A DNA stretch of 64,000 nt from Iphione sp. A-MEVVRFRX5. Its lineage: Eukaryota. Positions 1 to 64,000 of this stretch are shown here, piece by piece. Made by a program: the position numbers and the translations under genes. Positions within the stretch are counted from its first letter, which is position 1. Each line of letters starts with the position of its first letter. Under the pieces are notes generated by a model. The model searched no databases. It was not told the origin of the DNA and saw only the letters and a program-made list of their open reading frames with translations. The DNA lies in assembly GCA_976226885.1 (NCBI GenBank), contig OZ320315.1:97154001-97218000 (forward strand), written 5' to 3'.

Positions 1-539
1 ATGCCAGTGCTGACGGATGGTTGTCTTGGAAAACCGGATGTAGTGGGGGACCTCTGTATCCCAGCGAAAAACCAAATGCCACGCCGTTTAAGACAAACTG
101 GTCGTCTGGTTGACCCATTGCTGTATTTATCCACTTGTCCAGCTTGAGCGTGGAGTCGAGGTGTAGTCTCGCCCCTGCAGCATTTTGTACTCTAGTGCTG
201 GCCACAACATTGTACAAGTATGCCAATTTCTTCAGGAACTGTGCAACCGGCTCGGGCCAGGTCTCCGATGCCCCGCCAGGATATACTGCGGCAGCGGCAG
301 GACGATGGCGGTATCCTGGTATCTTGAAGGCCGTCACTGTCATAGTCCACTGAATGGGAGGACTCGATATCAGTGACAACATAACCTTGTTCGTGTGTCG
401 AGTGCCGGTGCACCTTCACATATGGGAGGGGGATGACCGCATGTAGCGAATAGTCCTTGGACATGGCCAAATTGTTTCGATGACCTAATAATGGTGTCGA
501 TGTGAGAAGCGGGGGCCCCAGGTCAAATAGTACTGCTGT

Positions 540-1050
540 AGCATCTAGTTTTTTTGGCTCCTTTTCTTGCTTCTCTTCTCGTCTCCACTTTGGCTCATCT
601 TGCTTCTCATTACGTTGTAGTTGCTGTTGCAGCTGAGCCTGTTGGTCTGATTCCTTTAAGCCAGGCGTACCGGCCAGGGGGGTGGGTGCGCTAATTGGTG
701 CGCCGGTAGTGGTTTCTGACCCTACTGGGTCACCACAGGCAGCAACAGAGACAGAAACAGGTATCATGGACACACCAACAGACACAGTACTGAGGGAGCA
801 TTCTACCCCCTCTGCACTGGTCTGTTTAGTCTTTTTAGCAAATCTGCCAGAGGAAGATCTCTTGCCTCTCTTTTGCTGACTAGGCTGCTCAGCTGGCATG
901 CCCATGATAGAGGAGGCCAAGTCCATGATACCACAATCACAAAAGCAATAAACACAAAATCAACAAAGCAAAGTTGAAAAAATACTCCCTTTGATGATCC
1001 TGATAGCAATAGAAATAGCAGAAAGATAGAACAGTGACAGAACAGTAAGT
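540..1050 (-). mobile_element. LINE ORF1 5-prime fragment embedded between DIRS gag and RT
   Basis: MGMPAEQPSQQKRGKRSSSG.. (about 730-907) is clearly homologous at DNA level to 36738-36910, which lies directly upstream of a LINE ORF1 coiled coil. Confidence 0.55.
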
Positions 1051-1888
1051 CTTCATGCACCCCTTCCTGGCACAGGCCATAGCGGTGTCCTGGCAGTCTT
1101 TGTTTTGCACACCGTACCAGCACACTGCGCACCTGTGCCAGTACATAAGTGGACCTTCCTTGTGGCCGTCATGTTCGCTACATGTTGACGAATTGTACAT
1201 GGGACATGGATGTCGCCTTTGGTCCTCCGTAAGGTTGCCCTTGATTAACGAGAGACGAGTATGGAGGCGATGAATATGGTCCTCCTGGAACCATGAGAGT
1301 TTTCCCTGGTCGATGTTATCAATAGTTGTGAGGGACCAATTCCTCACCGCCGGCCAGTCCCCATTGGTTGCATCCTCACATATCTCTGAGAGATGTATCA
1401 GGACATGGCATAGCTCGAATTCCATAGAGAAATCATCCAAGATCCGCACACAGAAGCCGAGGATATACTCCGAAAGCAAGAGGGTGTTTCCTAACAGGGA
1501 CAGCTAAATCTCGTGGAAGTGACACATAAGGACGCCATCTTAGATAAGTGTCCTGAGTGACTGGGTCTGGATATATCTTACCCGTCGCCGATCCAAAGTT
1601 GATATTCTCCCGTTCCAACCAGTTTCTTCTGCCATATTCTGAGTATCTGCCATTACGGTAGTCCTCAAGCGAGCGATACTGGTACGACTCAGTTCTGTGG
1701 TCGCAGTCATCCTTTGCCGATCTGCATTCCTCGCCTTTTGTTCGGTGCTCATGACTGCCCTCTCGGGAGCCTCGCTCCACCTCGCTACGTTTAGACTTGG
1801 ATTTGGACTTGGTTGTTGACTTGGGCGTCGAGGTCTTGACTATGCATTTCGCCTTGGTTTTCACGGCCTTGGTCTTTTTCCGACTCAC
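937..1888 (-). pseudogene. DIRS gag (frameshifted, Cys/His zinc knuckle)
   Basis: Overlapping ORFs 1433-1888 and 937-1479. Same W-x-x-VR-x-WS and PC-x-x-YN motifs as the gag remnant at 37590-37730. Confidence 0.75.
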
Positions 1889-2511
1889 CTCATGCTTCTG
1901 CTCCTCATGTTGAGGAGATTAGCAATGCACTCCTCAATACGCTTTTGGTCCAGGGTACCAGTAGACAGAACTGAGGGAGTAGAATCCGAGTTCTAGGGCT
2001 TGTCGTCGTGTGGTGGGTCATTTTTTTTCTTTTTTTTTAAACATTTCTTTATTTCAGGAATTTTGGGAGGCCTTGGAGGCCTTACATTTCCAGATCAGTC
2101 TTCTATGATTTCTTGCTATATCTTCGTTAAGTAAAAAGTAAAACATTGTTAGTACTGATTATGCATAATCTTTATTTGCGACGTATACCGAAACAAGGGG
2201 GGGGTCTCTCATATGAGAATACCCACCATTCTCATTGCATCATTTCTTCTTATCTTTCAGATTCTGACTATCAAAGTCTATTTGTTAGTAATGTGGTAGT
2301 GTGGAATGATTATGACGATGGATGTTAGTACTTGTATCAGTATAGTTTATGATAAGTAAATGATGGAGGAGAATTGCTGGGAAGAGAGTGTAGATGGGGG
2401 TGTTATGAAAGTGTTTTATTGCACGCTACCCTAGATGATTTTATGTGAATCCACGGACAGATGAGTATATAGTACAAACTCATATAAGCAATCTGGCCAG
2501 ATTGTTGTTCA

Positions 2512-5050
2512 TCATACTCTCCAATTTTCTTTCATCATTCGGTCAAACAGAAATTTCTTCAGTTGATTTTTAATATGGCTTATTGTTTCTTTGTTGGAAG
2601 CAATTGTATATTTCTGTAGGGCACTGGGGATAGTATTCCAGACCTTAATCTTGTTGTAATGAGGGGAATACCTGTAGGCCTCACAGTGCACCTTCAGCAT
2701 TTTTAATTGCAGACTAGTTTTTGCACGTGTATGCACCCCTGGGTGGCCATAGGTTGAGACAGATTCATCTTTAGGGGCTCTGCTACCATTGTTTTCTTTT
2801 ATGGCCATCAGTCCTAGGAAATATTCAATTCTCAAGTCGTATGGTAACAGGTGTAAATTTTGGTATAATATGTCAATGGGGCTTCGCCAATCTAAGAAAC
2901 AGTGCAGGACCAGTCTGTTCAAACAATTTGCAATACTCCTGAACCCAGGACTTCTTTTATTCAGTAGTAACTGGCAGCCCTGATCTGAGTATGGGACTAT
3001 GAAGGACTTAAATATCTGTTCTGTGCCCTTTTGAACAGGATAGTCAGGGGCTTCAAGGAATTCAGCACTCTAGTAATTTGTTTGGTCATTTTCAGGTGCT
3101 CTTCTAGATAGATGCCTAATATTTGACATGGTCCCTTTTATGAAGTCCTATCTTGTTTTCTATCAACTTTCCTTCCTGCTCACTCAATTTATTCCTCGGG
3201 TTAGAGAAGATTATCAGTTATGCTTTCTGATCATTTATATGTAGCCCATTTTTTCTACACCAATGCAATAATACCTGAAAGCCATTTTTTAATTTAGTAC
3301 CAACTTCCTCAGGTGTATTCCCAGTCATCACAAGAGTAGTATTGTCCGCATAGAGCTGACACTCACCCTTGGTAAATTGATTAAGGGGTACTCCTGCTCC
3401 CACTAAGTGTGGTTTAGATATCTTGTTATTCATTTTTGTGTGCTGTTTATGATCTGCAACCAGCAGTGATAGTTGTTTAGGCCAAATAAAGGTAATTTAG
3501 ACAGTATTATATCATGTTGGATGCTGTTGAATGCTTTAGCATAATCTATTAATAGTACCCCAGTTAACTGCTTCTTATTGAAATTTTCATATATAATATC
3601 TGCTAGTCTGACCACGGCGTCAGTAGTTGATCTATTTTTTCTAAAGCCAAATTGGAACTCATGTAGTAAATTGTTTGTCTCAATATGGTTATAGATTCTG
3701 GAATGTACAACCTGCTCAATAATTTCAGAAAATACTGGTAAAATAGTTCTTGGTCTATAGTTTGCTGCATTCTTTCGATCACCCTTTTTAAATAGGGGAG
3801 TTACCAACCCCTCTTTCCAATCAGCTGGTATAGTACCTTTCGTTAGTGAGGCATTTATTAGATGGGTTAGTTGATCTGTTAGGAAGAGCAGCACATTTTT
3901 TAAGAGATAACTTGTACACCGGTATAAGCCCGATGGTTTTGAAGTAACCTTTGAGAATTTCTTTGATCTCCTTCACAGTAGCTACTGTCATGTTAAGTCA
4001 AGGTATTCCTTCATTTTCTTCATCCAGTATGTTACTGAGTATTGGCAGCTCTGGATTTGATGATACATTCTGGGTCCCTACTGTTGCAAAGAATTTGTTT
4101 AAGTATTCAACACTATCCTCCTCATTTAGCAAAAGTCCGTTCTGATCATGTAATATAATACTTGGTTGAGATTTTTCTTTGGTCTTAAAAGCGTTCTTAA
4201 GGATTTTCCAATATCTTTTGGGATCATCCCGATTAGCATCTATTGATTTCTGGTAGTAAACACGTTTACAATTTTTTATTTTAGTTTTAACAGCGTTAAT
4301 TATGCGTTTCGCATATTTTATGTCAATAGGGTCCCTACTTCTCAACGATTTACGATAGACTCTCGATGACGGGATTCCATTTCCTGAATTTACAAGCTTG
4401 TTTATTGTATTTGGGTCCTTCAAATGGGCGTGAGCATGATGATCACTTAAATTCTATTTCCTTCGCACATATTTCAAATCAATAGTTGAGTTCACATACA
4501 GGTGGTCAATAAGTCGCACCCTTGCTACTTTCACGTGTAAATTCTGTTATTATTTGAGTATAGGAGTATTCCTCAAATAACAGTTTCAACCTTTGCGCTG
4601 GTGGATGTTCAAGGTTGGCATAGTTGATATTTACGTCTCCAATGAGAATCGTATTACCCCCCCTACGACCATCTATGGACTCCAATGAGTTCCTAATGTG
4701 GTCAAGAAAAACACCTACACTCCCAGATGGCGGTCTATAGATCATCCTTATGTTTATTTTCGCCCTTAGCAAGATTTGGAGCCAAAATAGCTCAATATCT
4801 TCATTATTGCCCTTTTTGGGTTGGATGAATCACGTATTTGAGTCTTACGATCTTGTCTTAACAGGTAATATCCACCAATTGCCAGACTCGGTGTTAAGAT
4901 ATTTGGAGTCAACCATGACTCAACCAAGATAATTAAGTTATAGCTAAATTTGTTGATTATGATCTTTAATTCATCCAGTTTCCCTTGAAGGCTTCGCACA
5001 TTCATGTAAAATATCTGGAGAGTCCATTTGGCATCGTGTGTCACCGCCAT
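2512..5050 (-). pseudogene. LINE A ORF2 (AP endonuclease + reverse transcriptase), fragmented
   Basis: ORFs 4766-5050, 4506-4772, 3998-4423, 3430-3894, 3218-3433 and 2512-2922 are collinear pieces of an EN-RT protein. Confidence 0.9.
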
Positions 5051-5689
5051 AATACGATCATTAATACAGTTTCATTTCTGGCATTATTTGACTTTATACT
5101 ATTTAGCATATTAAACAAATGATGGGCATACCGCTTAGATGGATATAGATAAATGAAATAATTATGTTGGAAAACACTGGTTGCCATAATTAATATAGGT
5201 AATGTAGGTCCCACCTTTATGATGAAGATACGGTTAGAAATGACAAAATAGGATGATGGTGACAAGGGTGGGGGAGGAGGCGGAGGCACAACTAAGATTT
5301 ACAGACTTCGTGAGAGTATTGTTGCATATCAGATATGTGGATTCACTATAGTTCAATCATCTGAAGCATGCACAATATGATATGAAGCAGTATTTATTTG
5401 CAAAACATTTATCTGTTTCAATGGCGTTGAAGACATGTTAGCCGAACATGGCAAAAAATACTATTCACTCAAGTTATTTGATTGCCCAATCGAAAAGATT
5501 TTTGAATTTCAAATGTTGAAATACTGCAATTACCAAGCTAGTGACCAAAATAGGTTTTATCGGGCAATACATAAATCCGTTAGTGGATAAATCCATACTT
5601 CATGTCTTTATAGGAGTGCGTTAGATAGGTCTAATACTAGAACCAGAATGGAAGTAGATGCTACCCATTTTCAACATGCACTCGGTAAT

Positions 5690-6376
5690 TCAAACAATAC
5701 ATTTTGTCAAAAATTTGACTAATTCTCTGGTTCGTTCCCAACGGAATTCTTCTTTTAGATGACATCCATCTGCTGTCTTATAATAACGATGATGGATTTT
5801 ACGGTTGTTGCGACTGTGAATAATACTTCCGACCCATGGAGTTGGCATATCTCGTTTAGCGTTCATTGCAGTAATATCAAGATTGATACGAATTATAGCA
5901 TCGTTTATCATATGCTGACATGGGTGGTCACTACCCATGTCTATATCCTCACTGCCATTGTATGCATTGTATTGGTGTAGGTTTGGTGCAGTAAAGGTAC
6001 TGATTGCAAACTTGTTGCTTTGAAAACGTCGTGACAGCTTCGTTTCTGCCTTGGCCAGCTCCCAATGTACACGGTAGTAAATCTCATCAGCTGATTCGTC
6101 TTGTGGCTGGATATTTCTTGCTGATTTTCCATTTGATAGGGTCACATATTCCAGGTGGGTGATATCATTTGTGCCAGCCAGGATGACTATCAGTGCCGGA
6201 TCCTGATTATACTCAAAATCGACAGCCAAATCGACCACCTCATTCAGCCTTCTTCCCGGATAGTGATGCATGTTTACAAACTGATCTTCTTTCCAGAGAT
6301 TATAACCAATACCCCTGCCGTTCGAGTCTGTGAACAAATAAACATCACTATGCAGATCCCAGATTTCACGAGCCAT
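5690..6376 (-). CDS. SGNH/GDSL-like esterase ORF (228 aa, open)
   Basis: Blocks FTDSNG (Ser), YPG, AGTNDI and ADGCHL (Asp-x-x-His) are all present. Its ATG overlaps the ORF1 stop (ATGGCTCGTGA, 6366-6376). Confidence 0.85.
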   Translation of the reverse strand: MAREIWDLHSDVYLFTDSNGRGIGYNLWKEDQFVNMHHYPGRRLNEVVDLAVDFEYNQDPALIVILAGTNDITHLEYVTLSNGKSARNIQPQDESADEIYYRVHWELAKAETKLSRRFQSNKFAISTFTAPNLHQYNAYNGSEDIDMGSDHPCQHMINDAIIRINLDITAMNAKRDMPTPWVGSIIHSRNNRKIHHRYYKTADGCHLKEEFRWERTRELVKFLTKCIV

Positions 6377-7612
6377 TTTCTAGCATTCGATTTTCGGCAT
6401 GTTTGTCCATGCCTGATCCTTCGTTACGTAGTGTCGTGCGGAGTTCAGTGAGTATATGACCCAGCTGATTCAGTCCTTTGTAGGTACCAGCTGTTATGAG
6501 GGGCGATCTGATTGGGGTGCCTGCCCCCTAAAACCCATCATTGCTTGCCTCAATTAGTAGGCAGTCACCACTCGATAGCAATTTACACTTCAGGTCATTG
6601 TTCTGGGTGAATTGGCAGTGAATATTTCCTTCATACAGGTAATCCTGTCTGCTTCCCAGGCCTCATCGAGTAACAACCTGTGCGTCTTTGCCTTTGTTTT
6701 GAAAGGGTCCTCGGTCATAAGAAGTTCACTTGCAAGAGTTTCGTCGCCCAATCGTTTGGCTTTGGCCACTGCGAATGCTTGTTTGACTGACGTAAATGCC
6801 ATTCTTTCCCAAATGAACTGGCATGAATACAAATTTGAAAAGGGATGGTGTTTCCCGGAGAACGCTAGGCCGGTTGTTGTTCTCACCTCTGAGGCCTTTT
6901 CAAGAGAAAGCTCGTCAGGCAGTTTATGCAAATTGTTTGTAGTAAACACTTGGCCGTTGATTGATAGTTTATCATTTTCCAATTTGGCGGATGCTCTGCT
7001 GGCTCGGGCATGGATAAGTATTTTTCTTAGCTCAGCCCGTTTATTTCTGTCTGATAGAGACAAGTCTTCGTTTATCCAAATCCCGGGGTGCTGTTTCAAT
7101 TTTGGTTTGTTCCCCAGGATTTCATGTTTCCATGACACCTTGAGGAAACTGACCATTATGTCTCTGTTCTTTCCAAATTTCTTTGGGCCCAGGCGAATGC
7201 ATTGGTCAATCTCGTAAGGCTGCATGGTTGGTGATAGCATTTGAAAAAGACCAAGCACCTTGGTCATTGTACTTAGTGGTGACTCAGACTCTTCCTCTAT
7301 TATGCCTGACATTATGATGTTATTCTTGCGTAATATTTTATCATGTTCTTAGGGTAGAATTATCATTGCGTAAAACTGTTACCTCAGCTTGAAGTCGGCT
7401 CACCTCACTTTTCTTGGACTGACCCCTAATTTCATCCACTAGTCTTGAAGTCTCTTCACTATTTTTATTATTAGCATGGGTCCATTCAGCTACCTCAGGT
7501 GTTAACTCATCATTTTTTGCTGTATTAGCTTTTATTGACTGTGTCATAAGAGTGAAGGAAGATGCAATTGTGCTAATATCACGGACAAGCTCTTGTAAGT
7601 TCGTTATATTTT
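6366..7612 (-). pseudogene. LINE A ORF1: coiled coil + RRM/CTD fused to a NADAR domain
   Basis: CIRLG..RDIMVSF..IWINEDLS (L1-like RRM/CTD), then FSGKHHPFSNLY..SVKQAF..AKA..W. After a frameshift near 6600: KFTQN..LL.SG..LIEASNDGF*GAG..GLNQLGHILTELR. Confidence 0.85.
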
Positions 7613-7945
7613 GGTAACGATTCTTCCTAGATCATTACCTGCCAAGTTACTCCTCACCTCACCAATGACTTGATCAAACATATCATGGAGTACATCATAC
7701 ATATTTACAATCTGAGTGCCATGAAAATCATCAAATTTTACCTCATATGTTGTATCAATAGCTCCATCTTTCATGAGAGTTCTTTGGTGTCTCTTTCTCA
7801 CTGTGTAGGGTGGTTTAGACAGTGTTGGTTGTGATGCTAGTGGTGCTTTGTCGTTAACCTGAAGCTTTCTCTTCTTCAGTGGAAGTGGTGGTGGTGGTTG
7901 TGATGGTACACTGAAGGCCTCTGCTGAGTGGGTTGGTTGTCGCAT
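7604..7945 (-). pseudogene. Polinton/Maverick-type protein-primed DNA polymerase ORF, N-terminal fragment, truncated at the LINE A junction
   Basis: DTTYEVKF..LHDMFDQVIGEVRSNLAGNDLGRIV resembles the N-terminus of invertebrate Polinton PolB ORFs as I recall them. No polymerase catalytic motifs remain. Confidence 0.6.
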
Positions 7946-8019: not shown

Positions 8020-8405
8020 CAGTCGGGTAGACACTGTTGGATCATCATCCTCCCATTCCCCGTCTGCCACACAAGCATTGACCAATTCTTCAATGGACTA
8101 AAACAATGTAAAACCATTTTCTGTAAAGATGTATATCACAGACACAAGAGAAAGATAGACAGTACTGAAATATTTTTCTACCTCTTGACTGTCCACAATA
8201 TGAAAAATGTGTTGAATTCTCATTCATCATGATTTATACCAAAATAATACATATAAGTGTATTAACATATACACACCTCATCTTCATGAGCCACTAAGTC
8301 ATCAGTATGCATTGATTCTCCATTTTGATCAGAGACAGTTTTGTCCTCATGATCGTCACCACTCTCCCAATCTTCCAGACAAGCATTCATCAGCTCTTGT
8401 ATGGA
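8020..8405 (-). other. Two paralogous exon-like segments upstream of the PolB-like ORF
   Basis: tttcag|SIQELMNACLEDWE..EDE|gtgtgt (8405-8277, 129 nt, phase 0) and ttttag|SIEELVNACVADGEWEDDD (from 8097). Confidence 0.45.
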
Positions 8406-8825
8406 CTGAAAGTATATTATACACCAAAAGGAAAAGATGAATTTACATTTTTTGTCATTGTGATACATTTCAATGATCAACATGTAATTTGACCAATATG
8501 GATATGGACTTGAAAGAAAAGTAATCTAACAATGTCAAGCCTACACAAGCCTATAAATCGAACCCTTCAAACTGAAAATTAATTCATGAATTCACAGAAT
8601 ACATTTGGTAAGTACTGTAATTCTTTCTGCTGTGAATACCATGTTGTATCATAATATAAAAATTACCTCTGGTACATGATCAGGAGAACTGAATACTTCT
8701 TCGACATCCATAGTATTCAACATATCAAGAACAGCTTGATTCAATTCATCCAGTGTCCCAGGAGACATGGAGAGATTCATGTCAACGTTGTCCATCTGAA
8801 AAAAAAAAATTTTAAAGATCTTTTG

Positions 8826-9260
8826 CTTTTTAGGATGGGTCTACTAAAGTCGACAGAAAGAGCACTTTAACTTGTTCAAAGTTCATGTATTTTATATCTA
8901 CAGAAAGCTAAAGGGCTGTTCTTTTCAGATCTGCATTCCGTTTTTCTCTATCTGTACTGTAAGTGTCTAATAACAGTGAGTGTAATCAGCAATCGGAAAG
9001 CGGCCGACTGGGCGAGCAGCATAATGTGCATGTTAGGGTAGGTCTACTAAGGTAGCCCAAAACAGCACTTATACTTGGCCGATTTTAATAAATTTTATGT
9101 CTACAGAAAGCTAATACTCTGCTCTTTCGAAATCTAAAATCCATTTGTTTCTATCTTTATTTTAAGTGTCTCAAAATGGCGAATAGATTTGCCAACAGGA
9201 AAGCGGCTGACTGTATGAGTGGCAACCAGAAAAGCTCAGTTTAGGGTGGACCAACTAGAA
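8826..9260 (+). repeat. R1: degenerate ~203-bp tandem repeat block
   Basis: Core GGTCTACTAA(A/G)GT at 8838 and 9041, degenerate at about 9245. Shared motifs TATRTCTACAGAAAGCT, AAGTGTCT and GGAAAGCGGC. Confidence 0.85.
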
Positions 9261-9614
9261 ATTGTCTGCAGTCTATGATCGGAATTAGATTCAACAACTT
9301 GGCTTGGAATGTTGAGAGTTCACTGATTCAAATAATACAACCAGTTTGACTGATATATTAACACCCATGCTACGAGGAGAGGTTTTGCCTATCAACAAGT
9401 GAAGAGCAGTGGATTGATAATTAAGTACCCACACTTTAGGGGGTTTATGACAGGGCTATACAACAGGACAGAGGTCAGTAAAGAGAGCAACAGATCCACG
9501 TCCTCAAGAGGAAAACAGTCTATGGGGAGGTCAAGTGTTTGATACGAAGTTGCAGTATCTGATATGTGAGTATTGAATCTGTATCAGTCTTTGTGAATCA
9601 ATGAGACAGGCAAC

Positions 9615-10196
9615 ATGGATTTCTTCAAATACTATTTAATTTTCACTGTGTTTGGATGTGCTCAGTCAACCTGGATATTATGTGGTCAACCCCACGTTTG
9701 CTACTGCTCCATGGATGGGGTAAATGTACGCTGTATGGGACCTCAGGTCATCCTGTTTCCACCCTTTTCAGTTGCTACTCATAGATCAACACAGATCTTA
9801 ACCATACAAGATACCAATATACGGAGCATCAAAAATTTGAATCTACACACATGGCCCGCACTTCAGATATTAAACATCCATAGAAATAACTACATGAAAA
9901 ATTGTCAACAGGAGAAGGAGACACTTATACTGGAAGGTAGAAACATTTCTGTTGTTAATGTACAATGTGACCATCCAGGGTCTACAGAAGAAAATCAGAT
10001 TTTTAATGTAACATTGATGGGAAATGACACGACTATGAGTGTAAATGACACAACACCAAATGTGGTGATAGTCAACAGTAATATGTTGTTTGCCTACATA
10101 ATACCTGTCATCGTTTTTGTTGGCATATTCATTGTGCCTGTTGCAGTTCTCTCATTGAAAAAATGTCGCAAAGGCAAAGAGACTCATTGTCAATGA
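9615..10196 (+). CDS. Minimal LRR type-I membrane protein (193 aa)
   Basis: Signal peptide, LRRNT C..CYC..C, about 2 LRRs (ILTIQDTNI, LQILNIHRN), Cys cap, N-glycosylation sequons NIS/NVT/NDT, TM segment LFAYIIPVIVFVGIFIVPVAVLSL, basic short tail. Intronless and intact. Confidence 0.8.
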   Translation: MDFFKYYLIFTVFGCAQSTWILCGQPHVCYCSMDGVNVRCMGPQVILFPPFSVATHRSTQILTIQDTNIRSIKNLNLHTWPALQILNIHRNNYMKNCQQEKETLILEGRNISVVNVQCDHPGSTEENQIFNVTLMGNDTTMSVNDTTPNVVIVNSNMLFAYIIPVIVFVGIFIVPVAVLSLKKCRKGKETHCQ

Positions 10197-10394
10197 AATA
10201 TACAAACCCACTACTACAGACTTTCTATAGTAGACTGAATTTTGATGATCCAAAATTTAACAGAAAACTAAGACTCCACCTTTTTAAAAACTGTATACAG
10301 TTTGACTCTATACCTCATACAAGTTTTAACAAATGTGAGGGGTTTTGTTGATCAGAAAATGGTGACCTGTATGAACAACAAGTCATAGTAAAAA

Positions 10395-48080: not shown

Positions 48081-48099
48081 ACGGGTGTAGAACCTAGGT

Positions 48100-54967: not shown

Positions 54968-55039
54968 GCCTGTTTGCCTCAGTCTGAGTGGATACCTTTA
55001 ACATTCAGTTCGCTTAGATCACTTTAAACACTCACTTTT

Positions 55040-56516
55040 AGATTCTGCCAGGTGATGCACTCCAGTGATTTTATTTAGTAGGCTGGTGACACCTGTAACA
55101 ATAGGTTTAGTATTCATGCAATAATGAGATGTGAGTTTGTGAACAAGCAGTGTTAGAAGGAAAGGTTTGGAAGTATATATTCAGTAAGAAATATTCAGTA
55201 TTACGTTGGGACCGGGGGAGATGATGAGATGGTATTAACTAGACAGCTGTACCATATCTCTATCGAGACTAGTGGCAAATTGAACCTTGTAATGAGGCAT
55301 TGTTTTATTGATAGCAACACTAACACCTTCGTAAATAACATTAATCACAAAAACATAAGCAAAGTTTTACACGGGGGTAAGATTATGTATAAATTACATG
55401 AGATTCGCAAGAAACTCCTCAAGGAAATCTGGAGCGATTTCTACTCAGGAAATATTAGACCAGGCATGTGAGGACGTGGTAGCCCTGAAATTCAAATATT
55501 TACATACTTTATAAAGACACACATACTTTGCAGTAGGGTCTCTCAGTATCGACACTATGAATGTTTGACCATTTTGCAGAAAAGATGCATATAACTAACC
55601 AGGCTGGCCTTTTGAGCACATAAATCAGATGATTTTCATATATATGATGGTAACAAAACATTGCTCTTCTGTCGACAGTTAGGTACAATAATAATATTAC
55701 AGGTATATTAGGAAATCCGAACGATTTCATCACAATCTGTATTCGGGTCGTTCAATGGCATGTAGCGCTCATTCTGTAGGTGGACGAGCATCGTCAATGC
55801 ATCCAGAGATTACCAGATAATTCATCATAATTATTTCACCTGTACCCGGTACAGCACAATGCGTGGCGGGATTAATGAAACAGTTTGCCGAGGAACTTAA
55901 TCACCTTCTCAATCATCTCAAGTCGACCCAGGGAATCCAGATGACAGCCATCCTCCAATTTCTGGTGCTTGTTGGTGTCACGTCCATTCGTCCCTACCAT
56001 GGATGATTGTTCCGATATGTGGAGTTGGCAGCCCATGGGATTTATTCAGCGCTCGGATGTTATTGATGACCTCATGCATAGCCGAGCTGAGGCTTCGTTG
56101 GGTGTCGCTAACCGATTTTCCTGTAAAAGAATCTCCGCGAAAGTAACTGTTATACCGGAGAATATCAGGGCAAAAAAACAAAGACCACAAATGAACTCGT
56201 CTCTTGTAGCATGTGTCAAAAAGTAATGTTTTGTCATCAGGTAGATATATTTGCTGACATACCTCACCGTTGGGTAGTGACGCATACTGATCCAAAGCGG
56301 TAGCATCATTTGTCCCAACTAGCAGCACAAACGGAATGTCATTAAGTGAGAAGTCCATTACCTTTTGCGTCAGATCGACAAGTCCGATTCCCGGGAAATA
56401 CTGAACTCTTAGGTCCTAATACCTCTCCGCCTAAGGTCTGATTGTAGGTGTTTCCCATGAGAATCGGTAAATATGTAAACTGATGGTGGGTATGCGTGCG
56501 AGTTCATAGTGTACAT
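55040..56516 (-). mobile_element. LINE C, 5-prime part: SGNH ORF (about 55750-56516) + EN N-terminus (55040-55110)
   Basis: Manual translation gives VYIFTDSHG..YFPG..LLVGTND, and VTSLLNKI..HLAES, which continues into (N)SPDIIIISETWL at 49665. Confidence 0.7.
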
Positions 56517-56520: not shown

Positions 56521-58535
56521 TCATTACAACACAACAAGAGGTGAGTGGAGACATGTTTATTGCGAGGAGACATGAGCAACAAGTGACATGAGGGCCTAAT
56601 GGCCAGAATAACAGCAATTACATGGATTAATCAATAATTAGGAGATATTAGGTTCTGGTTAGGCCAGTGGTTGCCCTGTGGGCATGAGGAGAGGGGCATG
56701 GCCTATGGCCTGAGTCCTCCTTGTCATTTGATTACTGAGAGTCCTTGCTGTTATCTTTGTGTTCGGCTTGGCTTGGAAGTGCTGAAAAGAGGGTTGGGTG
56801 GGTGGGTAATCTCAACGGTGGCGAGGACCAGAGTGAGGAGAGGGTGCGTAGGGGGGTCCCCTTCCTCACCATCGCGCATGCTCCATGCCTCCTCACCTCC
56901 CTCTGCAATGAGGGCGCATGCTCCGCATGCGTACTCATTACAACACAACAAGAGGTGAGTGGAGACATGTTTAATGCAAGGAGACATGAGCAACAAGTGA
57001 CATGAGGGCCTATAATGGCCAGAATAACAGCAATTACATGGATTAATCAATAATTAGGAGATATTAGGTTCTGGTTAGGCCAGTGGTTGCCCTGTGGGCG
57101 TGAGGAGAGGGGCATGGCCTATGGCCGGAGTCCTCCTTGTCATTTGATTATTGAGTGTCCTTGTGTTTCTGGCCCAAGGAGAGTTGTGTACTGATGGTGG
57201 CCCGTCGAACCTCTGGGAGGTAGGCGGATGCTGCCAGAGAGCGCCAGTCATCCTTCTCCAGCACTTGGCGCAGCCCAACGCCCGAGTGGAGGTCATGTCA
57301 GGCACCCCCGTGCCAGAGGGCGTGGAGTGTGACTGCACCCCTCGGGATGCCCAGCCGCTCCATAGCAAAGGCCCAACGACGGGCGACCACCGAGGCCTGG
57401 AGCGGGGTCCCATCCCTCCTCGAGATGAGGGGCTGGTGTTGGCTCAACGTTGGGGCGTACAGCAGGAGTCGTAGTATGGCTTCTATCAGTGCCGACCCCC
57501 AGGGCTCCTGTGGGTGTTGAATGGGTCAGATCGGGTGTAGAAGTGGCTCTGCCTCAGGAGGGAGGCGAACTGCAGCCGGAGGCCGCAGACAAGAGCCGGG
57601 CCATCTGGGTCATCGTGGAGGACCCGGCAGACGGCGTCCAGGAGCCCGGTGGTAACTGCAGGACGGGGCGCGTCCAGCACAGGCCGCCTCCTGGCAAGGC
57701 CTTTGAGGGCATTTGCAACGGGCTTTGAGGTCCAGGCTGAGTGCAGCAGATTGCGGTCCCCCAGGGCGCCCCGGATTGCCCCGATGGTGTTGGCGGTGGA
57801 CCAAGCTGAGGTGGACTCGGCACAGTGCTCCATGAAGGCGCAGTTCACTGCTGGTGTTGGGCACCCAGGGTCGATGCCATGTTTAGTGGCAAAGGCGGCA
57901 AACTTGGAGACCGCTGAGTCCCTGTTTCTCTTGGTGCCTGGGCGGATGGCTTCTTTGATGGTGTCCTCCGCCCTGGCGAGGAGTGTGTTGAGGCGTGGAT
58001 CTGTGGGTTATAAGAACATGTTGTAGTCATATGCCAAGGGAGGAATAGAGGTAAACGGAAGGGAGACAGAGGTGGTCAGGCGGGTGGCAAGCTCATGGGC
58101 GGCCGGGGAGAGGGAGGAGCGGCTGAGGGCGTCGGCGAGGACCATGGAGGCGCCGGGGCAGTGCTAGAAGGAGACTGCAATGCCCTCCAGTTCAGCCTCC
58201 ATCAACATCGCCCAGGCGCAAGCCAGGAGGACCGGGTCCCGGCCTCTGCCAGAGGAGTAGACGGAGACGGCTGCGGAGTTGTCACAGAGGAGGCAGACTC
58301 TGGTGGCCAGGGGTAGCCCAGGGAGGAAGGTCCTGAGGGCCAGGAGGCAATTGATGGCTTCTAGCTGAGAGATGTGGTGGTCGCGAGCCAGATGGCGGGG
58401 CCACATGGAGTAGCACCGGCTGCCATCAGAAGCGCCTGTGCTCTGGAGGCAGGCGTCGGCCTCGATGGTGATGTCGGGGGGGCCCGGCAGGAAGTATGAT
58501 ATACCATTGAAACGCTGGGTGAAGGAGTGGAGCAA
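56521..58535 (-). mobile_element. Ngaro/PAT-like element E, 3-prime half: RNase H, YR, B1-A2-B2
   Basis: ~225-bp near-identical direct repeats at 56521-56745 and 56936-57160 flank A2. RH ADACLQSTGA..HISQLEA..CDN. YR ASLLRQS. Confidence 0.88.
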
Positions 58536-58539
58536 TCAA

Positions 58540-61500
58540 TACATTAAAATACATCCATAAATAAATTACATAAAATATAATAAGTGTAGATGAGTGCCAA
58601 ACATTAGGATATGAGTGAGTTGACGAGGGCCTCCGTAGGCATTGGAGGTCCAGGTACCGAATTAACTGTAATACGTCACATCTGTGCTCATATGCTACTG
58701 TTGCTGCTGTTCTGCGGAGGCTATGCAAAGAGAGGCCTTCTGGATTCACATTGGCCTGAGTGGCCAGTTTAAGTAGTTGCTTACCAAGCCATGTCGACGT
58801 CACTGGTACCCTCAAGTTAGGCCAGGTAAGCCGAGGCTGAGCTACATGTAGCGTTGGTTGAAGTGTCGTTAACATTTTAAAAGTGTGTACAGGGCACAAC
58901 ATTGGATCAGGGGAACTGGGCAACACTATGTCTCTACACTGATAATACAATTGTTGGGTCTTCGACCATTTTTGTCTAATACACAGCGAATCCTTAACCA
59001 TTTTACAATCTGCCCGTGTTGGGTGACGTTCTTGGTTGAAAGCTGACATGGCTCGTGGAGCCACTTCCGACTGCCTTAACCCGGCATAAAACATCAGCAT
59101 AAGTGCCATTCGCAAAATCAGACCATGAGGAGCTGAAATAGTTGCGTACAGCAATCGTTTCACCTCGCCAGGTTTCAAGGGCCGTTTTTGTGCAAATACA
59201 TGTGATTTCGTACTTAAGACAGCGTCCAAGGCATGTTTTGCTTGCCTTGACTCAAAGGCTGTATCAAAATAGCCGTGGTCCTTAAGGAACTCTCTTATGG
59301 AAGAAATAACATTTACAACGGATGCTGGACTGCCGAGGAAGCTGGTTAAGTATGATATATACATACAGGCTTGCAACACACTGGGTTGGAACGGGAGTAC
59401 CCTGACGCGAAAGCAGAATGACAAGCATGTCCGGGCCGCAGATCGCCTGTTTGCAAGCGTCCCAGGAGCCCTTGCCTTAGCAACTAACCGTTCTGCTTCT
59501 GCCGCCAACGTCTGGAATCAGAGGTTAGGCCAGATAAAGTGTCAGTGACAGGTGAGATTCTCTGCAAGTTTCTCTGTGTGATGAAGTCTGAGGCAATGTA
59601 ATGGTACTTAGGATGGTCGTGCCATCTGGATGAGGCATCCGCAAGTACCATCATACTACCAGGAGTGTGTTCATACAAAATATTCACATGATACCTAGCT
59701 TGAAACAACCACATAGATCGGGCACATTTGAGTAATGTCGGGTCCCTCCCCCGACCAGATCTGAAGTTGTCAACTGCTGGCATGTTATCACATCGCACCT
59801 TGATGGTGGACCCTGCATGGCCGCGAATACACAGCGATTACAAGATTTGTTGCTTCTATCTGACTAATGTGCAATCCTTTGCAGTACGCGGGGATGGTCT
59901 CAGCGTAGTAGCTGAACTGGTCAGCCCCGCCGATTCTGTCCATACATGCGTCAACGACTATCTCTTTGTCCACAATGGTGTTGGGAATTATTGCAATTCC
60001 ATTCCACTCTGATAAGTAAGACCTAAGTCATCTGAGATCCAATCTAGCTTTACCATTCGTTTCCCTAAGGTTCTGCAGCAACCTACCCACGAACAGCCTG
60101 GCTGGTGGCACACATCTGGCTACCTGTAGGACTTTGCTGAGTAAGCTTTGGAAGTCGTGTTTGGACACCGATCGCCTCTTCAATGTCCCGACCACGACGT
60201 TCGATATCTCAGCTAGTTTGTCACCAGGGATTGAGACAGTCATATTTGTAGTGTCTATTTAAATTCCCAACCACCTGACACGCTGAGCGGGGGTTTGTGC
60301 TTTCTCATTTGCCTCGGGTAGGTTAAGTTCATTCAGGAGCTGCCGTACCCGTTCAAATGCCATGTCTGCTTTTTCCCTAGACTCTTCTGGCTATTCTTTG
60401 CATATGGTAAGCTGAGCATCGGAACCAAATGGAATGGCCGTGTCGAAGTAAACCTGGTTTTGCCAGGAGAACCCTAACAGTGTGGTGAAATTCCGATAGG
60501 CTCTAGCTACATCTAGCGTTGCCATAAATGGTGGCGAATGCATCTGTCGGATAACATTAAGTAGAGCTGCGACTGTTGGAAGAGAGTGGTCGCGAGTTAC
60601 CCCGAGAACCATATTTCTCCCAATGTATGTCTAATATAACCCTACGTTGCTGTGGCTCTTTTTTAGGTCGTGTCAAGAGAGGGGATAAGTGCATGGCTGG
60701 TGAGAAAGGACTTTTGTCCAAAGGGCCATGTACTGCGCCAAAAGATATTTCTTTTTGAATATAACTGTGTATTGAATCTGGAAACTGTGTAGCAGAGGGA
60801 TGATTAGTAGCACATTGCATCACGGGAGCTGGACCCATATAGCCTAGTGGGAAACCGTACGTCAGTAGATCGAGTAGCTGTGAATCGCCATCGTCGTACT
60901 TCAGGTATGCTTCCCAGGCAGCTATATTTGTGGTTGTGGGCACTGGTACACGTGTAACCACCACGTTCGGTTGCCCATCCTGTTTGACTGCTTGGTAAAT
61001 ACTACATCGGGCCAATTGGTCTTTTTATAGGCAGCTTATTGTTGAAAAGTACATACTGTCGTTATTTCCCCTATTTTGGTTTTACAAATTTCTCTGACCT
61101 TGTCAAACGTGATCTGAGATGGAACTGTTTGGTTCGCCAGAGGACTACAAGAGTCTCCTACTGGTGAACCTGTTGATACTCGTTTTTTGATTGAATCTTT
61201 GCATGTGGTTGTTGCGTAGCCAGAATGTTCGGGTTGGTCAGTTGTGTTTTTCCAATGTGCGTATGCTGGAGTTGTTGGTTTGGGGGTCGTGTCTGTGCTG
61301 TGGCCTTAGCTCGTTTTCCACAAACTATGTTTGTGTGAGGGTTCCTTGCCCTGCTAAGGGCATAGCAATACATACAGCAGTGTGTGAATTTTACCAATGG
61401 TTGTTTTGTATGGTCTGTCGTGTGTGAGCACCCAATTCCATTGAAGTGTGGACAAGGAACCTTGGTTGTTTGCTGCATTTGTCGAACCGCCTCTGCTACT

Positions 61501-61650
61501 CCCTTTATATACACCTTCAGCGGTGACGTGGCGATCTGGTTGACTTCACTCCTAATGACTCACCCTTACATGCCGCCACAATGAGTCATTGGTTGCATAG
61601 TATCGTTCCCGGTGGTCAATGAACTGTGACCTTAGCGAAGCACCTGCCCC
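58540..61650 (-). mobile_element. DIRS-type element F: gag C-terminus, RT, RNase H, tyrosine recombinase
   Basis: Gag 61158-61514 (PCPHFN..C..H..HCC.YC). RT 60028-61015 (LDVARAY, FDTAIPFG). RH VDACMD..HISQIEA..CDN..ADASSR. YR AGLRQSE, HSLRR, (frameshift) GTWTSNAY. Confidence 0.9.
58640..59508 (-). pseudogene. Tyrosine recombinase of DIRS F
   Basis: Catalytic R (AGLRQS) and H-x-x-R (HSLRR) are in frame. The W..Y motif follows a frameshift. Confidence 0.85.
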
Positions 61651-61653: not shown

Positions 61654-62500
61654 ATTTGATTTGATTTGATTTGATTTTTATTGTCTTTTCTCATAATGCA
61701 ATGAGGTGTTAATTTGACAGTGGTTGCTACAGAAAAAAGAGTTATTAACATTCTATACAAAAAGAAGTCGTGTTTACCCATTTACTGTCGAGGGAGGCTT
61801 CCACTAGCATCAGATCAGCAGTTTCTAACACCACTGTCGCCCTGTGACGTATCCCTTTCTAGTGTATCTATTCTAGCTTTCTCAGATTCAAGGTGTACGA
61901 TTTTCTTTTTGTCTACTTAGCGCAGACAGCGCGTCATTGATTTTTTGATTATTGTTTTGAATGCCCATATTGAATGATTCATGTATTTTCTTTGTTTCTG
62001 AAATATGTTCTGTCAGAATATCAGTCACATTTTTAAGCATAATTTGCAGGTCCGACCTCGTTTCATAAAACATAACCTGGACTGAGTCAGTAGGTTGGGA
62101 TTGCTCTATTAGTCGTTGGAGAGTCTGGAGAACTGACCTTTGTCTGGAATTAGTTCTGAATAACTGCCATCAGCAGTATTATTAGAAATCCCAGTAAGAG
62201 ACTCTTTACTTTTTTGTATCGATATTGAGATCAACAGGGCTTACCTCTTTTCTTTTGATGCCACCGTCATTCGGGACTATATTTCCCTTCCCTTCAGGGG
62301 TAATCGGTGTGACAGCAGTTGGCTCTAATGGGATAGGGTCTGTTGAGCAGGCATTCTTTTCTTCTTTTGCCATTGATTGAAGCGGGGTTAAAAATAATGG
62401 TGTTGCAAGCACTGCGTCCACATAGCCTGCGGCCGAGTGCGTTGAAGCGTCGTGTGGTTGGGTATTGTTTTCCGCGGTGTCCATGTCTCTTGGGTACGAG
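61654..62500 (-). mobile_element. LINE remnant: ORF1 N-terminus/coiled coil, short NADAR remnant (61775-61835), (AATCA)n tail
   Basis: VLETADLMLVEASLDSKW. GATTT repeats at 61654-61675 plus TTTATT. Confidence 0.6.
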
Positions 62501-62599
62501 ACAATCCAGCGGTAGTTTTTAAATCCAAGTTTCCGCGTTAAATGTCTTAAATGTCGCCCTGATGATTATATTGGCGAGCGGTCTAGTGTAGTTGAGGGG

Positions 62600-62960
62600 A
62601 ATTAGTGCCACCAGTCACTCCCCCAGTCCGCAAAACACGTCCGTTCACCTCCACGCCATCATGTGTCTCTCTAGCTGCCATCACTGCCTCACGAGGGAAG
62701 ATGGACCTGTCCACCCTGTGTGTATCAGATGACGGGGTGCCGACAGTGATGCCGAAATCCTCACCAAGGAAGAAATCTCCCAGTTGCCAGTCACCCGACC
62801 AGGTTATGCTCTAGGCTTGCATGCTGGCGTCTATCTTCACACTGTCTGAGATGGGGTCCTGAGGTCTTATGATCTTGGCTGCTTTGTTGAAAGTAGCTGC
62901 AAACTGAGTCCACCAGTTTGTCCTCATGGAATTCTCTGCCCAACCTCACTCGGTCAGATT
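62600..62960 (-). mobile_element. Possible DIRS RNase H fragment
   Basis: Manual translation WWTQF..FN..VKIDASMQA*..DWQLG resembles the DIRS RT-RH junction. Confidence 0.5.
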
Positions 62961-62964
62961 TGCT

Positions 62965-63800
62965 TTGAATTGAATTGAATTGAAAAACTGTTTATTGAGC
63001 AAAGATACGTCATCTACAATAGATATTTTGCAGCAAGCTGCTCAGCCCATGACTTCCTCCAATCAACAGGCTGCAATCTTACAGAGAAAACAGAAAACCA
63101 GAAACTTTTGAAAACTACATTTTCTTCAAGTACTTTCTTATGCTTTTACCATTCCCAGTTAATATGATGAGGGACTACATAAGCGGCAAATAATTTTCTT
63201 CTTAGCTCAATGTCTGAAAATAGTTTACTCCTCTTTAATAAAAATGATACCGAATGCAATTTATTAATTTTGTACTGTATCATTCCTGACACTGTCAACT
63301 TGTTATCTAAGTGAATGCCTAGGAATTATCCAAGTATCCACTTGTTCCAACACTACAGTACCCAGTTTTAAATCCAAATGGAATCCTATTGTCTTCCCAA
63401 ATACCATGGCTTTTGGTTTGACTACATTCAGTATTAGGCCATTCTGAATGCTCCATGTTAATACTTGATTTAGTGTATACTGCAGTTTGGCCCTTAAACT
63501 TAAGGCATTCGACCCCGTCGACACAATCATATGCTAATATTTTACTTGGGAATGACACCCCAAATATGACATTTAATAAAATTATGAACAACCAAGGGCC
63601 TAAGATAGACCCCTGAGGTACACCACATGAAACAACAGTCTCCGTAGACATAGAGCCATTACACTTTACTCTTTGAGTTCTTCCACTAAGATAATCCATA
63701 AACCAACGCAGAATTTGCCCTTTGAACCCATATTTGTCCAACTTCTTTAATACTAAGGTATGGTTGATGAGGTCGAATGCCTTCGACATATCCAAATTTG
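62965..63800 (-). mobile_element. LINE 3-prime fragment (RT) with (ATTCA)n tail
   Basis: TGAAT repeats at 62965-62984 plus TTTATT. DMSKAFD, GVPQGSILGP. Confidence 0.88.
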
Positions 63801-63822
63801 CCGTAGCTATCTATTTGTTTTG

Positions 63823-64000
63823 ATTTTTTTTTTTGGAACTTTTATTTATCCTGGCTTCCACTGAAGCCAGCCATAGCACTGGGTACATGATTCATCCAGC
63901 CATAGCACTGGGTACATGATTCAGACTTGACTTTAAATATATACAATATATACAATGTATGTACAATGTATTCTTAATCCAAATTCCAATGAAACGTTGA
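63823..64000 (-). mobile_element. 3-prime end of a further LINE (poly(A), AATAAA), containing a 30-bp tandem duplication
   Basis: T-run at about 63823-63834, TTTATT at about 63841. CCAGCCATAGCACTGGGTACATGATTCA occurs twice. Confidence 0.55.

What the first reader, a model, noticed from the sequence alone, without database searches (positions are those of the whole stretch)
1..64000. All ~25 transposon segments of several classes share one strand (flamenco-like piRNA cluster or TE trap)
Seen in sequence: every LINE, DIRS/Ngaro, Polinton-like PolB and BESS-like remnant reads on the minus strand, and all LINE tails appear as T-runs or pentamer repeats at the left end. The only long intact plus-strand genes are the two LRR ORFs. 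For 20 independent, randomly oriented insertions, the chance of total agreement is about 2 x 0.5^20 (roughly 2e-6), although nesting may not be independent. The elements use different integration chemistries (TPRT vs tyrosine recombinase), so a shared targeting bias is a poor explanation. Established: uni-strand piRNA clusters such as Drosophila flamenco are nests of fragmented TEs oriented antisense to one long transcript. Inference: a plus-strand precursor transcript selects for antisense TE fragments here.
Basis: partly seen in the sequence, partly recalled or inferred. Interest (0 to 1): 0.78.

Follow-up and report, generated by a model that had tools for sequence, protein, structure and literature searches.

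The report
One-strand nest of decayed transposons
About 22 broken transposon pieces from three unrelated classes all point the same way across this 64 kb window, which fits a locus transcribed on the opposite strand (a piRNA-type transposon trap or a long host intron), but DNA alone cannot say which.

Summary
I count about 22 transposon-derived segments, all coding on the minus strand:
- 14 LINE or retroposon pieces
- 7 Ngaro/DIRS-like tyrosine-recombinase retroelement pieces
- 1 remnant of a protein-primed PolB gene

107 outside proteins gave 691 tblastn matches. All were on the minus strand and none on the plus strand. 83 homologous ORF pieces lie on minus. The 4 on plus are only antisense frames of one direct DNA repeat.

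The longest plus-strand ORFs that do not just overlie a minus-strand transposon ORF are two small signal-peptide/TM ORFs with weak LRR similarity. Five LINE tails are T-runs or pentamer repeats at the left ends. I did not find the "BESS-like" remnant.

Recent segmental duplication, an old about 18 kb tandem unit and a telomeric array were each tested and rejected.

The chance value depends on independence: about 5e-7 for 22 events, but 0.004 if neighbouring same-class pieces are merged into 9 groups. Several LINE tails abut 5'-truncated LINEs, so the smaller count is reasonable.

The piRNA-cluster reading remains untested. Plus-strand transcription, small RNAs and flanking exons cannot be seen here. 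I rate it 0.35, a plus-strand host gene or intron 0.30, and insertion mechanics 0.20.

The parts
1..2017 (-). N4: 5' part of a Ngaro/DIRS-like retroelement (gag-like region, then the start of RT). It runs off the left edge of the window.
   Evidence: The outside element L003 maps here: gag aa 246-389 and RT aa 107-191, both on minus. The gag-like ORF also matches the L003 and L004 gag proteins.
2018..7518 (-). LINE J, near full length but broken many times. Order: NADAR-like region, domain X, endonuclease, RT, C-terminal region, A-rich tail. A 9-bp target duplication is possible.
   Evidence: Pfam RVT_1 and weak NADAR. Homology to the other LINEs. Tail. 9-mer repeated at both ends. Domain X matches an outside LINE ORF.
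7541..7945 (-). Remnant of the N-terminal, non-catalytic part of a protein-primed PolB gene (Polinton-type or similar). It is cut off next to the 5' end of LINE J.
   Evidence: 57 relatives were found. All 5 relatives of 685 aa or more that were scanned carry PF03175 downstream of the matched stretch. tblastn hits occur only here, and only on minus.
8044..12436 (.). Stretch colinear with metagenome contig L001 at 71-88% DNA identity. It holds two arrays of a roughly 205-bp repeat, the shorter plus ORF, and an unassigned minus ORF (11525-12193).
9615..10196 (+). 193-aa ORF with a signal peptide, a Cys-capped LRR-like stretch and a TM helix.
   Evidence: Translation. Pfam LRR_4 E 0.02 and LRR_8 E 0.034, both below cut-off.
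12893..15128 (.). Inverted copies of the roughly 205-bp repeat (12893-13125 and 14704-15128) framing the longer plus ORF.
13347..14414 (+). 355-aa ORF, the longest open frame on the plus strand. It has a signal peptide, an LRRNT/LRR/LRRCT-like cap, a TM helix and a proline-rich tail.
   Evidence: Translation. Weak PDB matches to LGR4, TLR8 and VLR LRR caps, E 8e-4. No exact match in the gene index.
16101..19660 (-). N3: decayed recombinase retroelement with gag-like, short RT and recombinase N-domain pieces in that order. A short LINE C-terminal-like piece lies at its 3' side.
   Evidence: Weak but colinear matches: gag E 0.004, RT E 0.001, recombinase E 0.003. 63% aa identity to N2 pieces.
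19665..21064 (-). LINE I: pre-RT and RT only, truncated at both ends.
21071..22700 (-). LINE H: 5'-truncated (RT C-half plus C-terminal region) with an A15 tail that abuts LINE I.
   Evidence: Pfam RVT_1 4.5e-23. Tail.
22750..24553 (-). LINE G: 5'-truncated within RT.
24520..27923 (-). LINE F: endonuclease plus RT plus C-terminal region, broken.
   Evidence: Pfam RVT_1 2.3e-24 and Exo_endo_phos. Also.
28850..31394 (-). LINE E: domain X plus endonuclease. The 3' part is unclear.
31507..31767 (-). LINE E2: short endonuclease N-terminal fragment abutting the 3' end of LINE D.
31850..36227 (-). LINE D: near full length, heavily decayed. Its ORF1 region (coiled coil plus NADAR-like) and ORF2 are related to LINE B.
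36727..41150 (-). N2: composite of at least three recombinase-retroelement fragments (RT pieces, RNase H-like pieces, recombinase N-domain).
   Evidence: L003 RT maps at 37417-36906 and 39187-39077. Homology to N1, N3 and N4 pieces.
41165..48093 (-). LINE C: ORF1 region with a NADAR domain, then endonuclease, RT and C-terminal region, then a short A-run.
   Evidence: NADAR PF08719 E 2.9e-20. RVT_1 1.9e-29. Also.
48400..49662 (-). LINE K: begins inside the endonuclease domain directly after the tail of LINE B. The 3' part is missing.
   Evidence: Exo_endo_phos_2. Also.
49666..55500 (-). LINE B, the least decayed element. Order: ORF1 region (coiled coil plus NADAR-like), ORF2 (endonuclease plus RT; longest open piece 661 aa), then AATAAA and a TTCAA-like tail. 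Breaks: one frameshift in ORF2 and two in-frame stops in the ORF1 region.
   Evidence: Pfam. Tail. Best outside ORF2 hits are only 31% identical.
55884..56415 (-). LINE piece L: domain X only, lying upstream of LINE B.
   Evidence: 29% aa identity to domain X of LINE J, E 1e-14.
56521..58535 (-). N1b: 5'-truncated Ngaro-like element (end of RT/RNase H, then recombinase), followed by two 234-bp direct repeats of 96% identity.
58429..61650 (-). N1a: nearly full-length Ngaro-like element with gag-like Zn-knuckle region, RT/RNase H and tyrosine recombinase in that order. Broken.
   Evidence: L003 gag, RT and recombinase map colinearly, RT E 4e-84. Recombinase relatives carry PF00589/PF13495. Weak Pfam hit.
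61654..62964 (-). A2: 3' part of a retroposon with AATAAA and a (TCAAA)n tail. No coding homology was found.
62965..63810 (-). LINE A: 5'-truncated (RT C-half) with AATAAA and a (TTCAA)4 tail.
   Evidence: RVT_1 5e-12. Also.

Best explanation
The window is part of a long plus-strand transcription unit that serves as a one-strand transposon trap, that is, a uni-strand piRNA source locus. LINEs, Ngaro-like elements and a PolB-bearing element inserted over a long period. Copies lying antisense to the plus-strand transcript were kept, for two reasons. They do not bring their own poly(A) signals or promoters into the transcript. Their antisense RNA can be processed into small RNAs that silence active copies. 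Sense-oriented copies were lost.

Shown here:
- Strict co-orientation of about 22 pieces from three classes.
- Agreement in orientation between old and young copies.
- No duplication that could explain the pattern.

Inferred, not shown:
- The plus-strand transcript.
- Its processing into piRNAs.
- Orientation-dependent retention.
For: - All transposon coding similarity is on minus: 83 ORF pieces against 4 on plus, and those 4 are antisense frames of a direct repeat. Outside proteins gave 623 + 13 + 55 matches, all minus.
- Three integration chemistries are represented: endonuclease/RT LINEs, a gag-RT-recombinase element and a PolB remnant.
- Decay ranges from LINE B (661-aa open piece, about three breaks) to LINEs D and I (longest homologous open piece 127 and 107 aa), so the bias persisted over time.
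- The copies are different families, not duplicates. Self-blastn finds only 20 short matches, the longest 421 bp.
- AATAAA occurs 60 times on the transposon sense strand (expected 38, z 3.6) but 28 times on plus (expected 25). A plus-strand RNA would therefore meet about half as many canonical poly(A) hexamers.
- The longest plus-strand ORFs that do not merely overlie a minus-strand transposon ORF (355 and 193 aa from ATG) are both on plus.
- Strand bias in 100-kb windows has successfully nominated flam-like clusters (PMC10643416).
Against: - There is no expression or small-RNA evidence of any kind.
- Flam-like clusters are defined by Gypsy/ERV enrichment. No LTR-element domain was found here.
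- Two apparently intact plus-strand membrane-protein ORFs sit inside the array, which is unusual for a dedicated cluster.
- AATAAA is not depleted on the plus strand.
- Effective independent events may number about 9 rather than 22.
- The number of windows scanned is unknown, so a look-elsewhere effect applies.
- The same pattern is expected inside a plus-strand host gene.
Confidence: 0.35

Rival explanations
1. This is ordinary antisense retention bias. The window lies in a very long intron, or in the transcribed neighbourhood or read-through zone, of one or more plus-strand host genes. Sense-oriented transposons were purged because they disrupt host mRNA processing. No piRNA role is needed.
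For: - The two plausible host ORFs are both on plus.
- AATAAA is enriched on the transposon sense strand, which is the usual reason given for antisense bias in genes (established knowledge).
- The pattern covers the whole window and runs off the left edge.
Against: - The antisense bias known for introns is moderate, roughly 60-70% for LINE/LTR elements in mammals (my own knowledge). It is not 22 of 22.
- Introns longer than 64 kb are uncommon in most invertebrates.
- No plus-strand ORF of the 24 tested has any Pfam domain that would mark a flanking or internal exon.
- Same-strand nested genes inside an intron are unusual.
Confidence: 0.3
2. Insertion mechanics make the events non-independent. 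New LINEs were added head-to-tail at or next to resident LINE ends, by priming on tails, by template switching, or by insertion at breaks. Recombinase elements recombined into resident relatives. That leaves only a handful of founder orientations, which agree by luck.
For: - LINE tails directly abut 5'-truncated LINEs at B to K, H to I and D to E2, and at the tail-bearing A to A2 junction.
- The run F-G-H-I is a series of 5'-truncated elements.
- N1a/N1b and the N2 pieces are tandem partial recombinase elements.
- With 9 groups, p is only 0.004.
- Priming on A-rich or repeat tails giving same-orientation neighbours is established for L1/Alu-type elements (my own knowledge).
Against: - This does not explain why LINE blocks, recombinase-element blocks and the PolB remnant all agree with each other.
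- The 3' flanks of six tails share no common target sequence.
- No tail remnant follows the downstream element, and the search for target duplications found nothing except a 9-mer for LINE J.
- Tail motifs differ between neighbours: (TTCAA)n against (TCAAA)n.
- 0.004 is still small for a single window.
Confidence: 0.2
3. This is chance. The window is an extreme value picked from a scan of very many windows in a transposon-rich genome.
For: With about 9-12 effective events, p is 1e-3 to 4e-3 per window. A genome of several tens of thousands of 64-kb windows would then contain dozens of such windows.
Against: With 15 or more independent events, p is below 1e-4. There is not one counter-example among 83 ORF pieces and 691 outside-protein matches.
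Confidence: 0.1
4. The orientation was inherited through segmental or tandem duplication of a founder block, or the region is a former telomeric retrotransposon array.
For: - Protein-level colinearity at about 18.3 kb offset: D with B, E2 with K, N2 with N1.
- Head-to-tail 5'-truncated LINEs resemble Drosophila telomere arrays (established knowledge; PMC5537684 was listed).
Against: - The spacers share no DNA similarity, and D against B is only 56-62% identical.
- A block-order shuffle gives P = 0.49 for offset clustering as strong as the strongest observed in the real order.
- B is far less decayed than D, so they cannot be same-age duplicates.
- There are no TTAGGG or TTAGG repeats.
- Intact-looking genes lie inside the array.
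Confidence: 0.03

Closest known systems
Drosophila flamenco and flam-like uni-strand piRNA clusters (PMC10643416)
   Same: A transposon-dense stretch of tens of kb or more, with fragments of many families nearly all on one strand. Old and young copies are mixed. It was found by the same kind of strand-bias criterion.
   Different: No Gypsy/ERV LTR elements are present. The content is LINE plus Ngaro-like plus a PolB remnant. Two intact-looking protein ORFs lie inside. The genome shows CpG decay (o/e 0.53), unlike Drosophila. No promoter, transcript or piRNA evidence exists, and the full size is unknown.
Antisense orientation bias of retroelements inside host genes or introns
   Same: The transposons lie antisense to the only plausible host ORFs. 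Poly(A) hexamers are enriched on the transposon sense strand.
   Different: The bias here is absolute (22 of 22) and spans at least 64 kb. No spanning gene could be seen.
Head-to-tail telomeric non-LTR arrays (HeT-A/TART/TAHRE)
   Same: There are runs of variably 5'-truncated LINEs whose tails abut the next element, all in one direction.
   Different: No telomere repeats are present. Recombinase elements, a PolB remnant and genes are interspersed. Many LINE families are involved rather than dedicated ones.
Tx1-type LINEs with a NADAR domain in ORF1, noted for Crassostrea gigas (PMC12477816)
   Same: A NADAR domain lies upstream of the endonuclease/RT ORF2 in LINEs B, C, D and J. Outside locus L002 has the same layout.
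   Different: Clade membership was not tested by phylogeny. The best outside ORF2 identity is only 31%. No shared insertion target was seen.
Ngaro / DIRS-like tyrosine-recombinase retroelements
   Same: The gene order gag, then RT/RNase H, then recombinase is present. Short direct repeats lie at the 3' end of N1b.
   Different: No methyltransferase domain was seen. Full terminal repeat structure was not recovered. All copies are broken.

Membership tests
flamenco-type uni-strand piRNA cluster | Transposon-dense region with strong one-strand orientation bias | tested here: met
   About 22 of 22 segments are on minus. All 691 outside-protein matches are on minus.
flamenco-type uni-strand piRNA cluster | Single long Pol II transcript antisense to the transposons | not testable with these tools
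   No expression data are available. The consensus promoter scan offered covers bacterial-type sites only and was not used.
flamenco-type uni-strand piRNA cluster | Abundant one-strand 24-32 nt small RNAs with 5' U bias | not testable with these tools
   No small-RNA data are available.
flamenco-type uni-strand piRNA cluster | Enrichment of Gypsy/ERV LTR elements (a criterion in PMC10643416) | tested here: not met
   No LTR-element domains (integrase, protease, env) were found in 81 window ORFs scanned against Pfam. No LTR-sized direct repeat pairs were found.
flamenco-type uni-strand piRNA cluster | Extent of hundreds of kb | tested here: inconclusive
   The pattern fills the window. N4 runs off the left edge. 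Nothing beyond 64 kb is visible.
APE-type LINE (non-LTR retrotransposon) | Endonuclease (Exo_endo_phos) and RT in one ORF, with a 3' tail | tested here: met
   The 661-aa open piece of LINE B's ORF2 has both domains. Tails were confirmed.
Tx1-type LINE with NADAR ORF1 | NADAR domain encoded upstream of ORF2 | tested here: met
   PF08719 E 2.9e-20 in LINE C. Weaker matches in J, B and D. Outside locus L002 has the same layout.
Tx1-type LINE with NADAR ORF1 | Tx1 clade placement; sequence-specific target | tested here: inconclusive
   No phylogeny was run. The 3' flanks of six tails share no motif, which argues against a single specific target.
Ngaro/DIRS-like retroelement | gag, RT/RNase H and tyrosine recombinase in one element | tested here: met
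   N1a is colinear with the L003 gag, RVT_1 protein and recombinase. Recombinase relatives carry PF00589/PF13495.
Ngaro/DIRS-like retroelement | Split direct or inverted terminal repeats | tested here: inconclusive
   Two 234-bp direct repeats lie 3' of N1b. No matching 5' copy of the spacer was found.
Polinton/Maverick | Protein-primed PolB catalytic domain | tested here: inconclusive
   Only the N-terminal, non-catalytic stretch survives. Its long relatives carry PF03175. No DTDS-type polymerase motif sits in a PolB context.
Polinton/Maverick | Integrase, capsid genes, terminal inverted repeats | tested here: not met
   No such domains appeared in the scanned ORFs. No fitting inverted repeats were found.
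Telomeric retrotransposon array | Association with chromosome end or telomere repeats | tested here: not met
   No TTAGGG or TTAGG arrays were found.
Intronic antisense transposon bias | Flanking exons of a plus-strand gene spliced across the region | not testable with these tools
   No annotation or RNA data are available. The source genome is absent from the protein index.

The most novel reading that the evidence does not exclude
This is a flamenco-like uni-strand piRNA source locus in a CpG-methylating animal that is neither an insect nor a mammal. It would be built not from ERVs but from NADAR-bearing LINEs, Ngaro-like recombinase elements and a Polinton-type remnant, with two small LRR membrane-protein genes embedded in, and co-transcribed with, the precursor.
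Probability: 0.3. Interest if true: 0.6.

Novelty: new member of a known kind. Interest (0 to 1): 0.45.

Why it matters
If small-RNA and transcript data confirm it, this would be a DNA-predicted uni-strand transposon trap outside Drosophila, aimed at non-LTR and recombinase retroelements. That would show that strand-bias scans can nominate piRNA source loci in poorly studied animals.

If the region turns out to be an intron, it is an unusually clean example of orientation-dependent purging.

Either way, the window gives a compact catalogue of LINEs with a NADAR domain in the ORF1 region. That feature has so far been mentioned only in passing for oyster Tx1 elements.

Tried and rejected
1. Recent segmental duplication. 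Self-blastn found only 20 short matches and no long blocks. Rejected.
2. Old tandem unit of about 18.3 kb, suggested by colinear offsets. The spacers share no DNA similarity and a block-shuffle test gave P = 0.49. Rejected.
3. Telomeric array. No telomere repeats were found. Rejected.
4. Tail-targeted insertion, tested by searching for target duplications or tail remnants. Nothing was found beyond one 9-mer for LINE J. Unsupported, but not excluded.
5. LINE pieces L and K as two halves of one element split by LINE B, and likewise E and I as halves split by F-G-H. No supporting homology was found in the spacer. E and I appear to overlap in reference coordinates. Left open.
6. Identifying the organism. 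There was no exact gene match. The best LINE ORF2 relatives are 31% identical, including some Mytilus proteins. Outside loci come from unnamed ENA metagenome assemblies. The organism is unknown. It is not human-like, because Ngaro-type elements and pentamer-tailed LINEs are present.
7. Depletion of poly(A) hexamers or splice-donor motifs on the plus strand, as a footprint of transcription. No depletion was seen. Uninformative.
8. Rfam and tRNA scans found nothing.
9. The 'BESS-like' remnant was not located in any Pfam scan.
10. The joined-exon step does not apply, because no spliced model was proposed.
Full report
**Material.** The window has no N and 43% G+C. CpG o/e is 0.53 with TpG/CpA excess, so the genome undergoes germline CpG methylation decay. 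It is eukaryotic and not human-like, since Ngaro-type elements and pentamer-tailed LINEs are present. Nothing was filled in or fetched from other copies of this genome.

**Check of the observation.**
- Open frames are lopsided. There are 35 minus and 7 plus stop-to-stop ORFs of at least 150 aa.
- Pfam places RVT_1 and/or the LINE endonuclease only on minus, in eight LINE stretches, with a weak tyrosine-recombinase hit also on minus.
- 24 plus-strand ORFs gave no transposon domain.
- Inside the window, all 92 homologous ORF pairs are co-oriented. In six-frame searches only a roughly 205-bp non-coding repeat matches in opposite orientation.
- Independent outside evidence agrees. 50 LINE ORF2 and recombinase proteins from other organisms give 623 matches, all minus.
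- In total, 83 homologous ORF pieces lie on minus. The 4 on plus are antisense frames of one direct DNA repeat.

**Anatomy.** Reading the minus strand from right to left, the order is as follows.
- LINE A, then retroposon end A2.
- The Ngaro-like element N1a, nearly full length, then the 5'-truncated N1b with two 234-bp direct repeats.
- LINE piece L, then LINE B (least decayed), then LINE K, then LINE C.
- The composite recombinase-element block N2.
- LINEs D, E2, E, F, G, H and I.
- The recombinase element N3.
- A stretch of about 7 kb holding the roughly 205-bp repeats and the two plus ORFs.
- A PolB remnant, then LINE J, then the Ngaro-like N4, which runs off the left edge.

**Class assignments.**
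- The recombinase-element assignment rests on an outside locus, L003, encoding gag, an RVT_1 protein and a recombinase in that order. It maps colinearly onto N1a (RT E 4e-84) and partly onto N1b, N2 and N4.
- N3 has only weak but colinear matches.
The ORF at 7607-8041 has 57 relatives. All five scanned relatives of 685 aa or more carry DNA_pol_B_2 downstream of the matched stretch. The match in the window is confined to 7541-7945 on minus.
- I could not find the BESS-like remnant.

**Tails and junctions.** AATAAA followed by (TTCAA)n, (TCAAA)n, a TTCAA-like run, A15 or an A-rich run closes A, A2, B, H and J on the minus strand. F, D and I show no clear tail. Several tails or 3' ends directly abut a 5'-truncated LINE: B to K, H to I, D to E2, and A to A2. 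The neighbouring LINEs are therefore probably not independent events.

**State of the genes.** Every element is broken. LINE B has one frameshift in ORF2 and two in-frame stops in its ORF1 region. The other LINEs and the recombinase elements are split into between 1 and 8 homologous open pieces each. I give no positions for the breaks.

**Statistics.** With 22 independent segments the two-sided chance is about 5e-7. Pooling adjacent same-class pieces into 9 groups gives 0.004. The true value lies between these, and the unknown number of windows scanned weakens it further.

- Recent segmental duplication is excluded.
- A suggestive offset of about 18.3 kb (D with B, E2 with K, N2 with N1) fails on three counts. 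The spacers share no similarity. B is far less decayed than D. Shuffling block order reaches the strongest offset clustering seen in the real order (6 block pairs in one band) in 49% of trials.
- There are no telomere repeats.
- Whether the window lies in an intron cannot be tested.

**Explanation.** Agreement across three integration chemistries, and across old and young copies, argues for a lasting, orientation-dependent force. Transcription of the plus strand is the best known such force. AATAAA is enriched on the transposon sense strand (60 against 38 expected) and is at expectation on plus (28 against 25). This fits the usual cost of sense-oriented insertions, but it is not a footprint of transcription.

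My ratings are:
- A uni-strand piRNA-type trap: 0.35.
- A plus-strand host gene or intron: 0.30.
- Mechanical non-independence plus luck: 0.20.
- Pure chance: 0.10.
- Duplication or telomere origin: 0.03.

Strand bias alone has nominated real flam-like clusters before, but confirmation came from small-RNA data (PMC10643416).

**The plus-strand ORFs.** Both have a signal peptide, a Cys-capped LRR-like stretch and a TM helix. LRR similarity is weak, and the two are not detectably related to each other. A 368-codon open frame is unlikely by chance in this composition. That is my own estimate, about 1e-3 for the whole window.

**Housekeeping.**
Comparisons used ORF pieces as they stand.
- While counting the breaks of LINE B, I derived the place of one stop from those bounds in my reasoning. 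I flag this here. No break positions appear in this report.

Noticed in passing
46430-46837, 53495-54163, 6593-7348, 35295-35858 (all minus); outside locus L002 7841-8518: LINEs B, C, D and J encode a NADAR domain upstream of ORF2 (PF08719, E 2.9e-20 in C). The nearest outside LINE has the same layout. The literature mentions this only in passing, for oyster Tx1 LINEs (PMC12477816).
   Followed up: partly
5693-6379, 30764-31306, 55981-56415 (minus); L002 8950-9588: A further conserved LINE ORF ('domain X') lies between the NADAR region and ORF2 in J and in L002, and upstream of the endonuclease in E. The third copy (piece L) stands alone upstream of LINE B. It has no Pfam family. By eye, a TDSNG-like motif hints at an SGNH/GDSL-type esterase, as in some LINE ORF1 proteins. 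This was not verified.
   Followed up: partly
8824-9224, 10452-10918, 14704-15128 (direct); 12893-13125 (inverted): Short arrays of a roughly 205-bp repeat frame both plus-strand ORFs. The longer ORF sits between inverted copies. These are the only features in the window found in both orientations. They may be satellite-like repeats carried by a non-autonomous element.
   Followed up: partly
8044-12436; locus L001: A 3.3-kb metagenome contig is colinear with this stretch at 71-88% DNA identity but lacks the segment holding the 193-aa plus ORF. This could be a repeat family or an orthologous locus in a relative, with loss or gain between flanking direct repeats.
   Followed up: partly
11525-12193 (minus): This 223-aa ORF has a Glu-rich tail and one 272-aa relative (P0051, 55% aa identity, 71% DNA identity). 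It has no known domain. Similar identity in all reading frames suggests little purifying selection.
   Followed up: partly
56521-56752 and 56935-57167: Two 234-bp direct repeats of 96% identity, 182 bp apart, lie just 3' of the N1b recombinase. They resemble the split direct repeats at Ngaro 3' ends. No 5' partner of the spacer exists in the window.
   Followed up: yes
whole window: CpG o/e is 0.53 with TpG and CpA excess in all blocks (0.36-0.66), indicating long-term germline CpG methylation of both transposons and the gene-bearing stretch.
   Followed up: no
722-906 and 36729-36910: This is the only long-range DNA repeat with identity above 85% (87% over 188 bp). It links the N4 element to a fragment in N2, so one Ngaro-like family has been active relatively recently.
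   Followed up: partly
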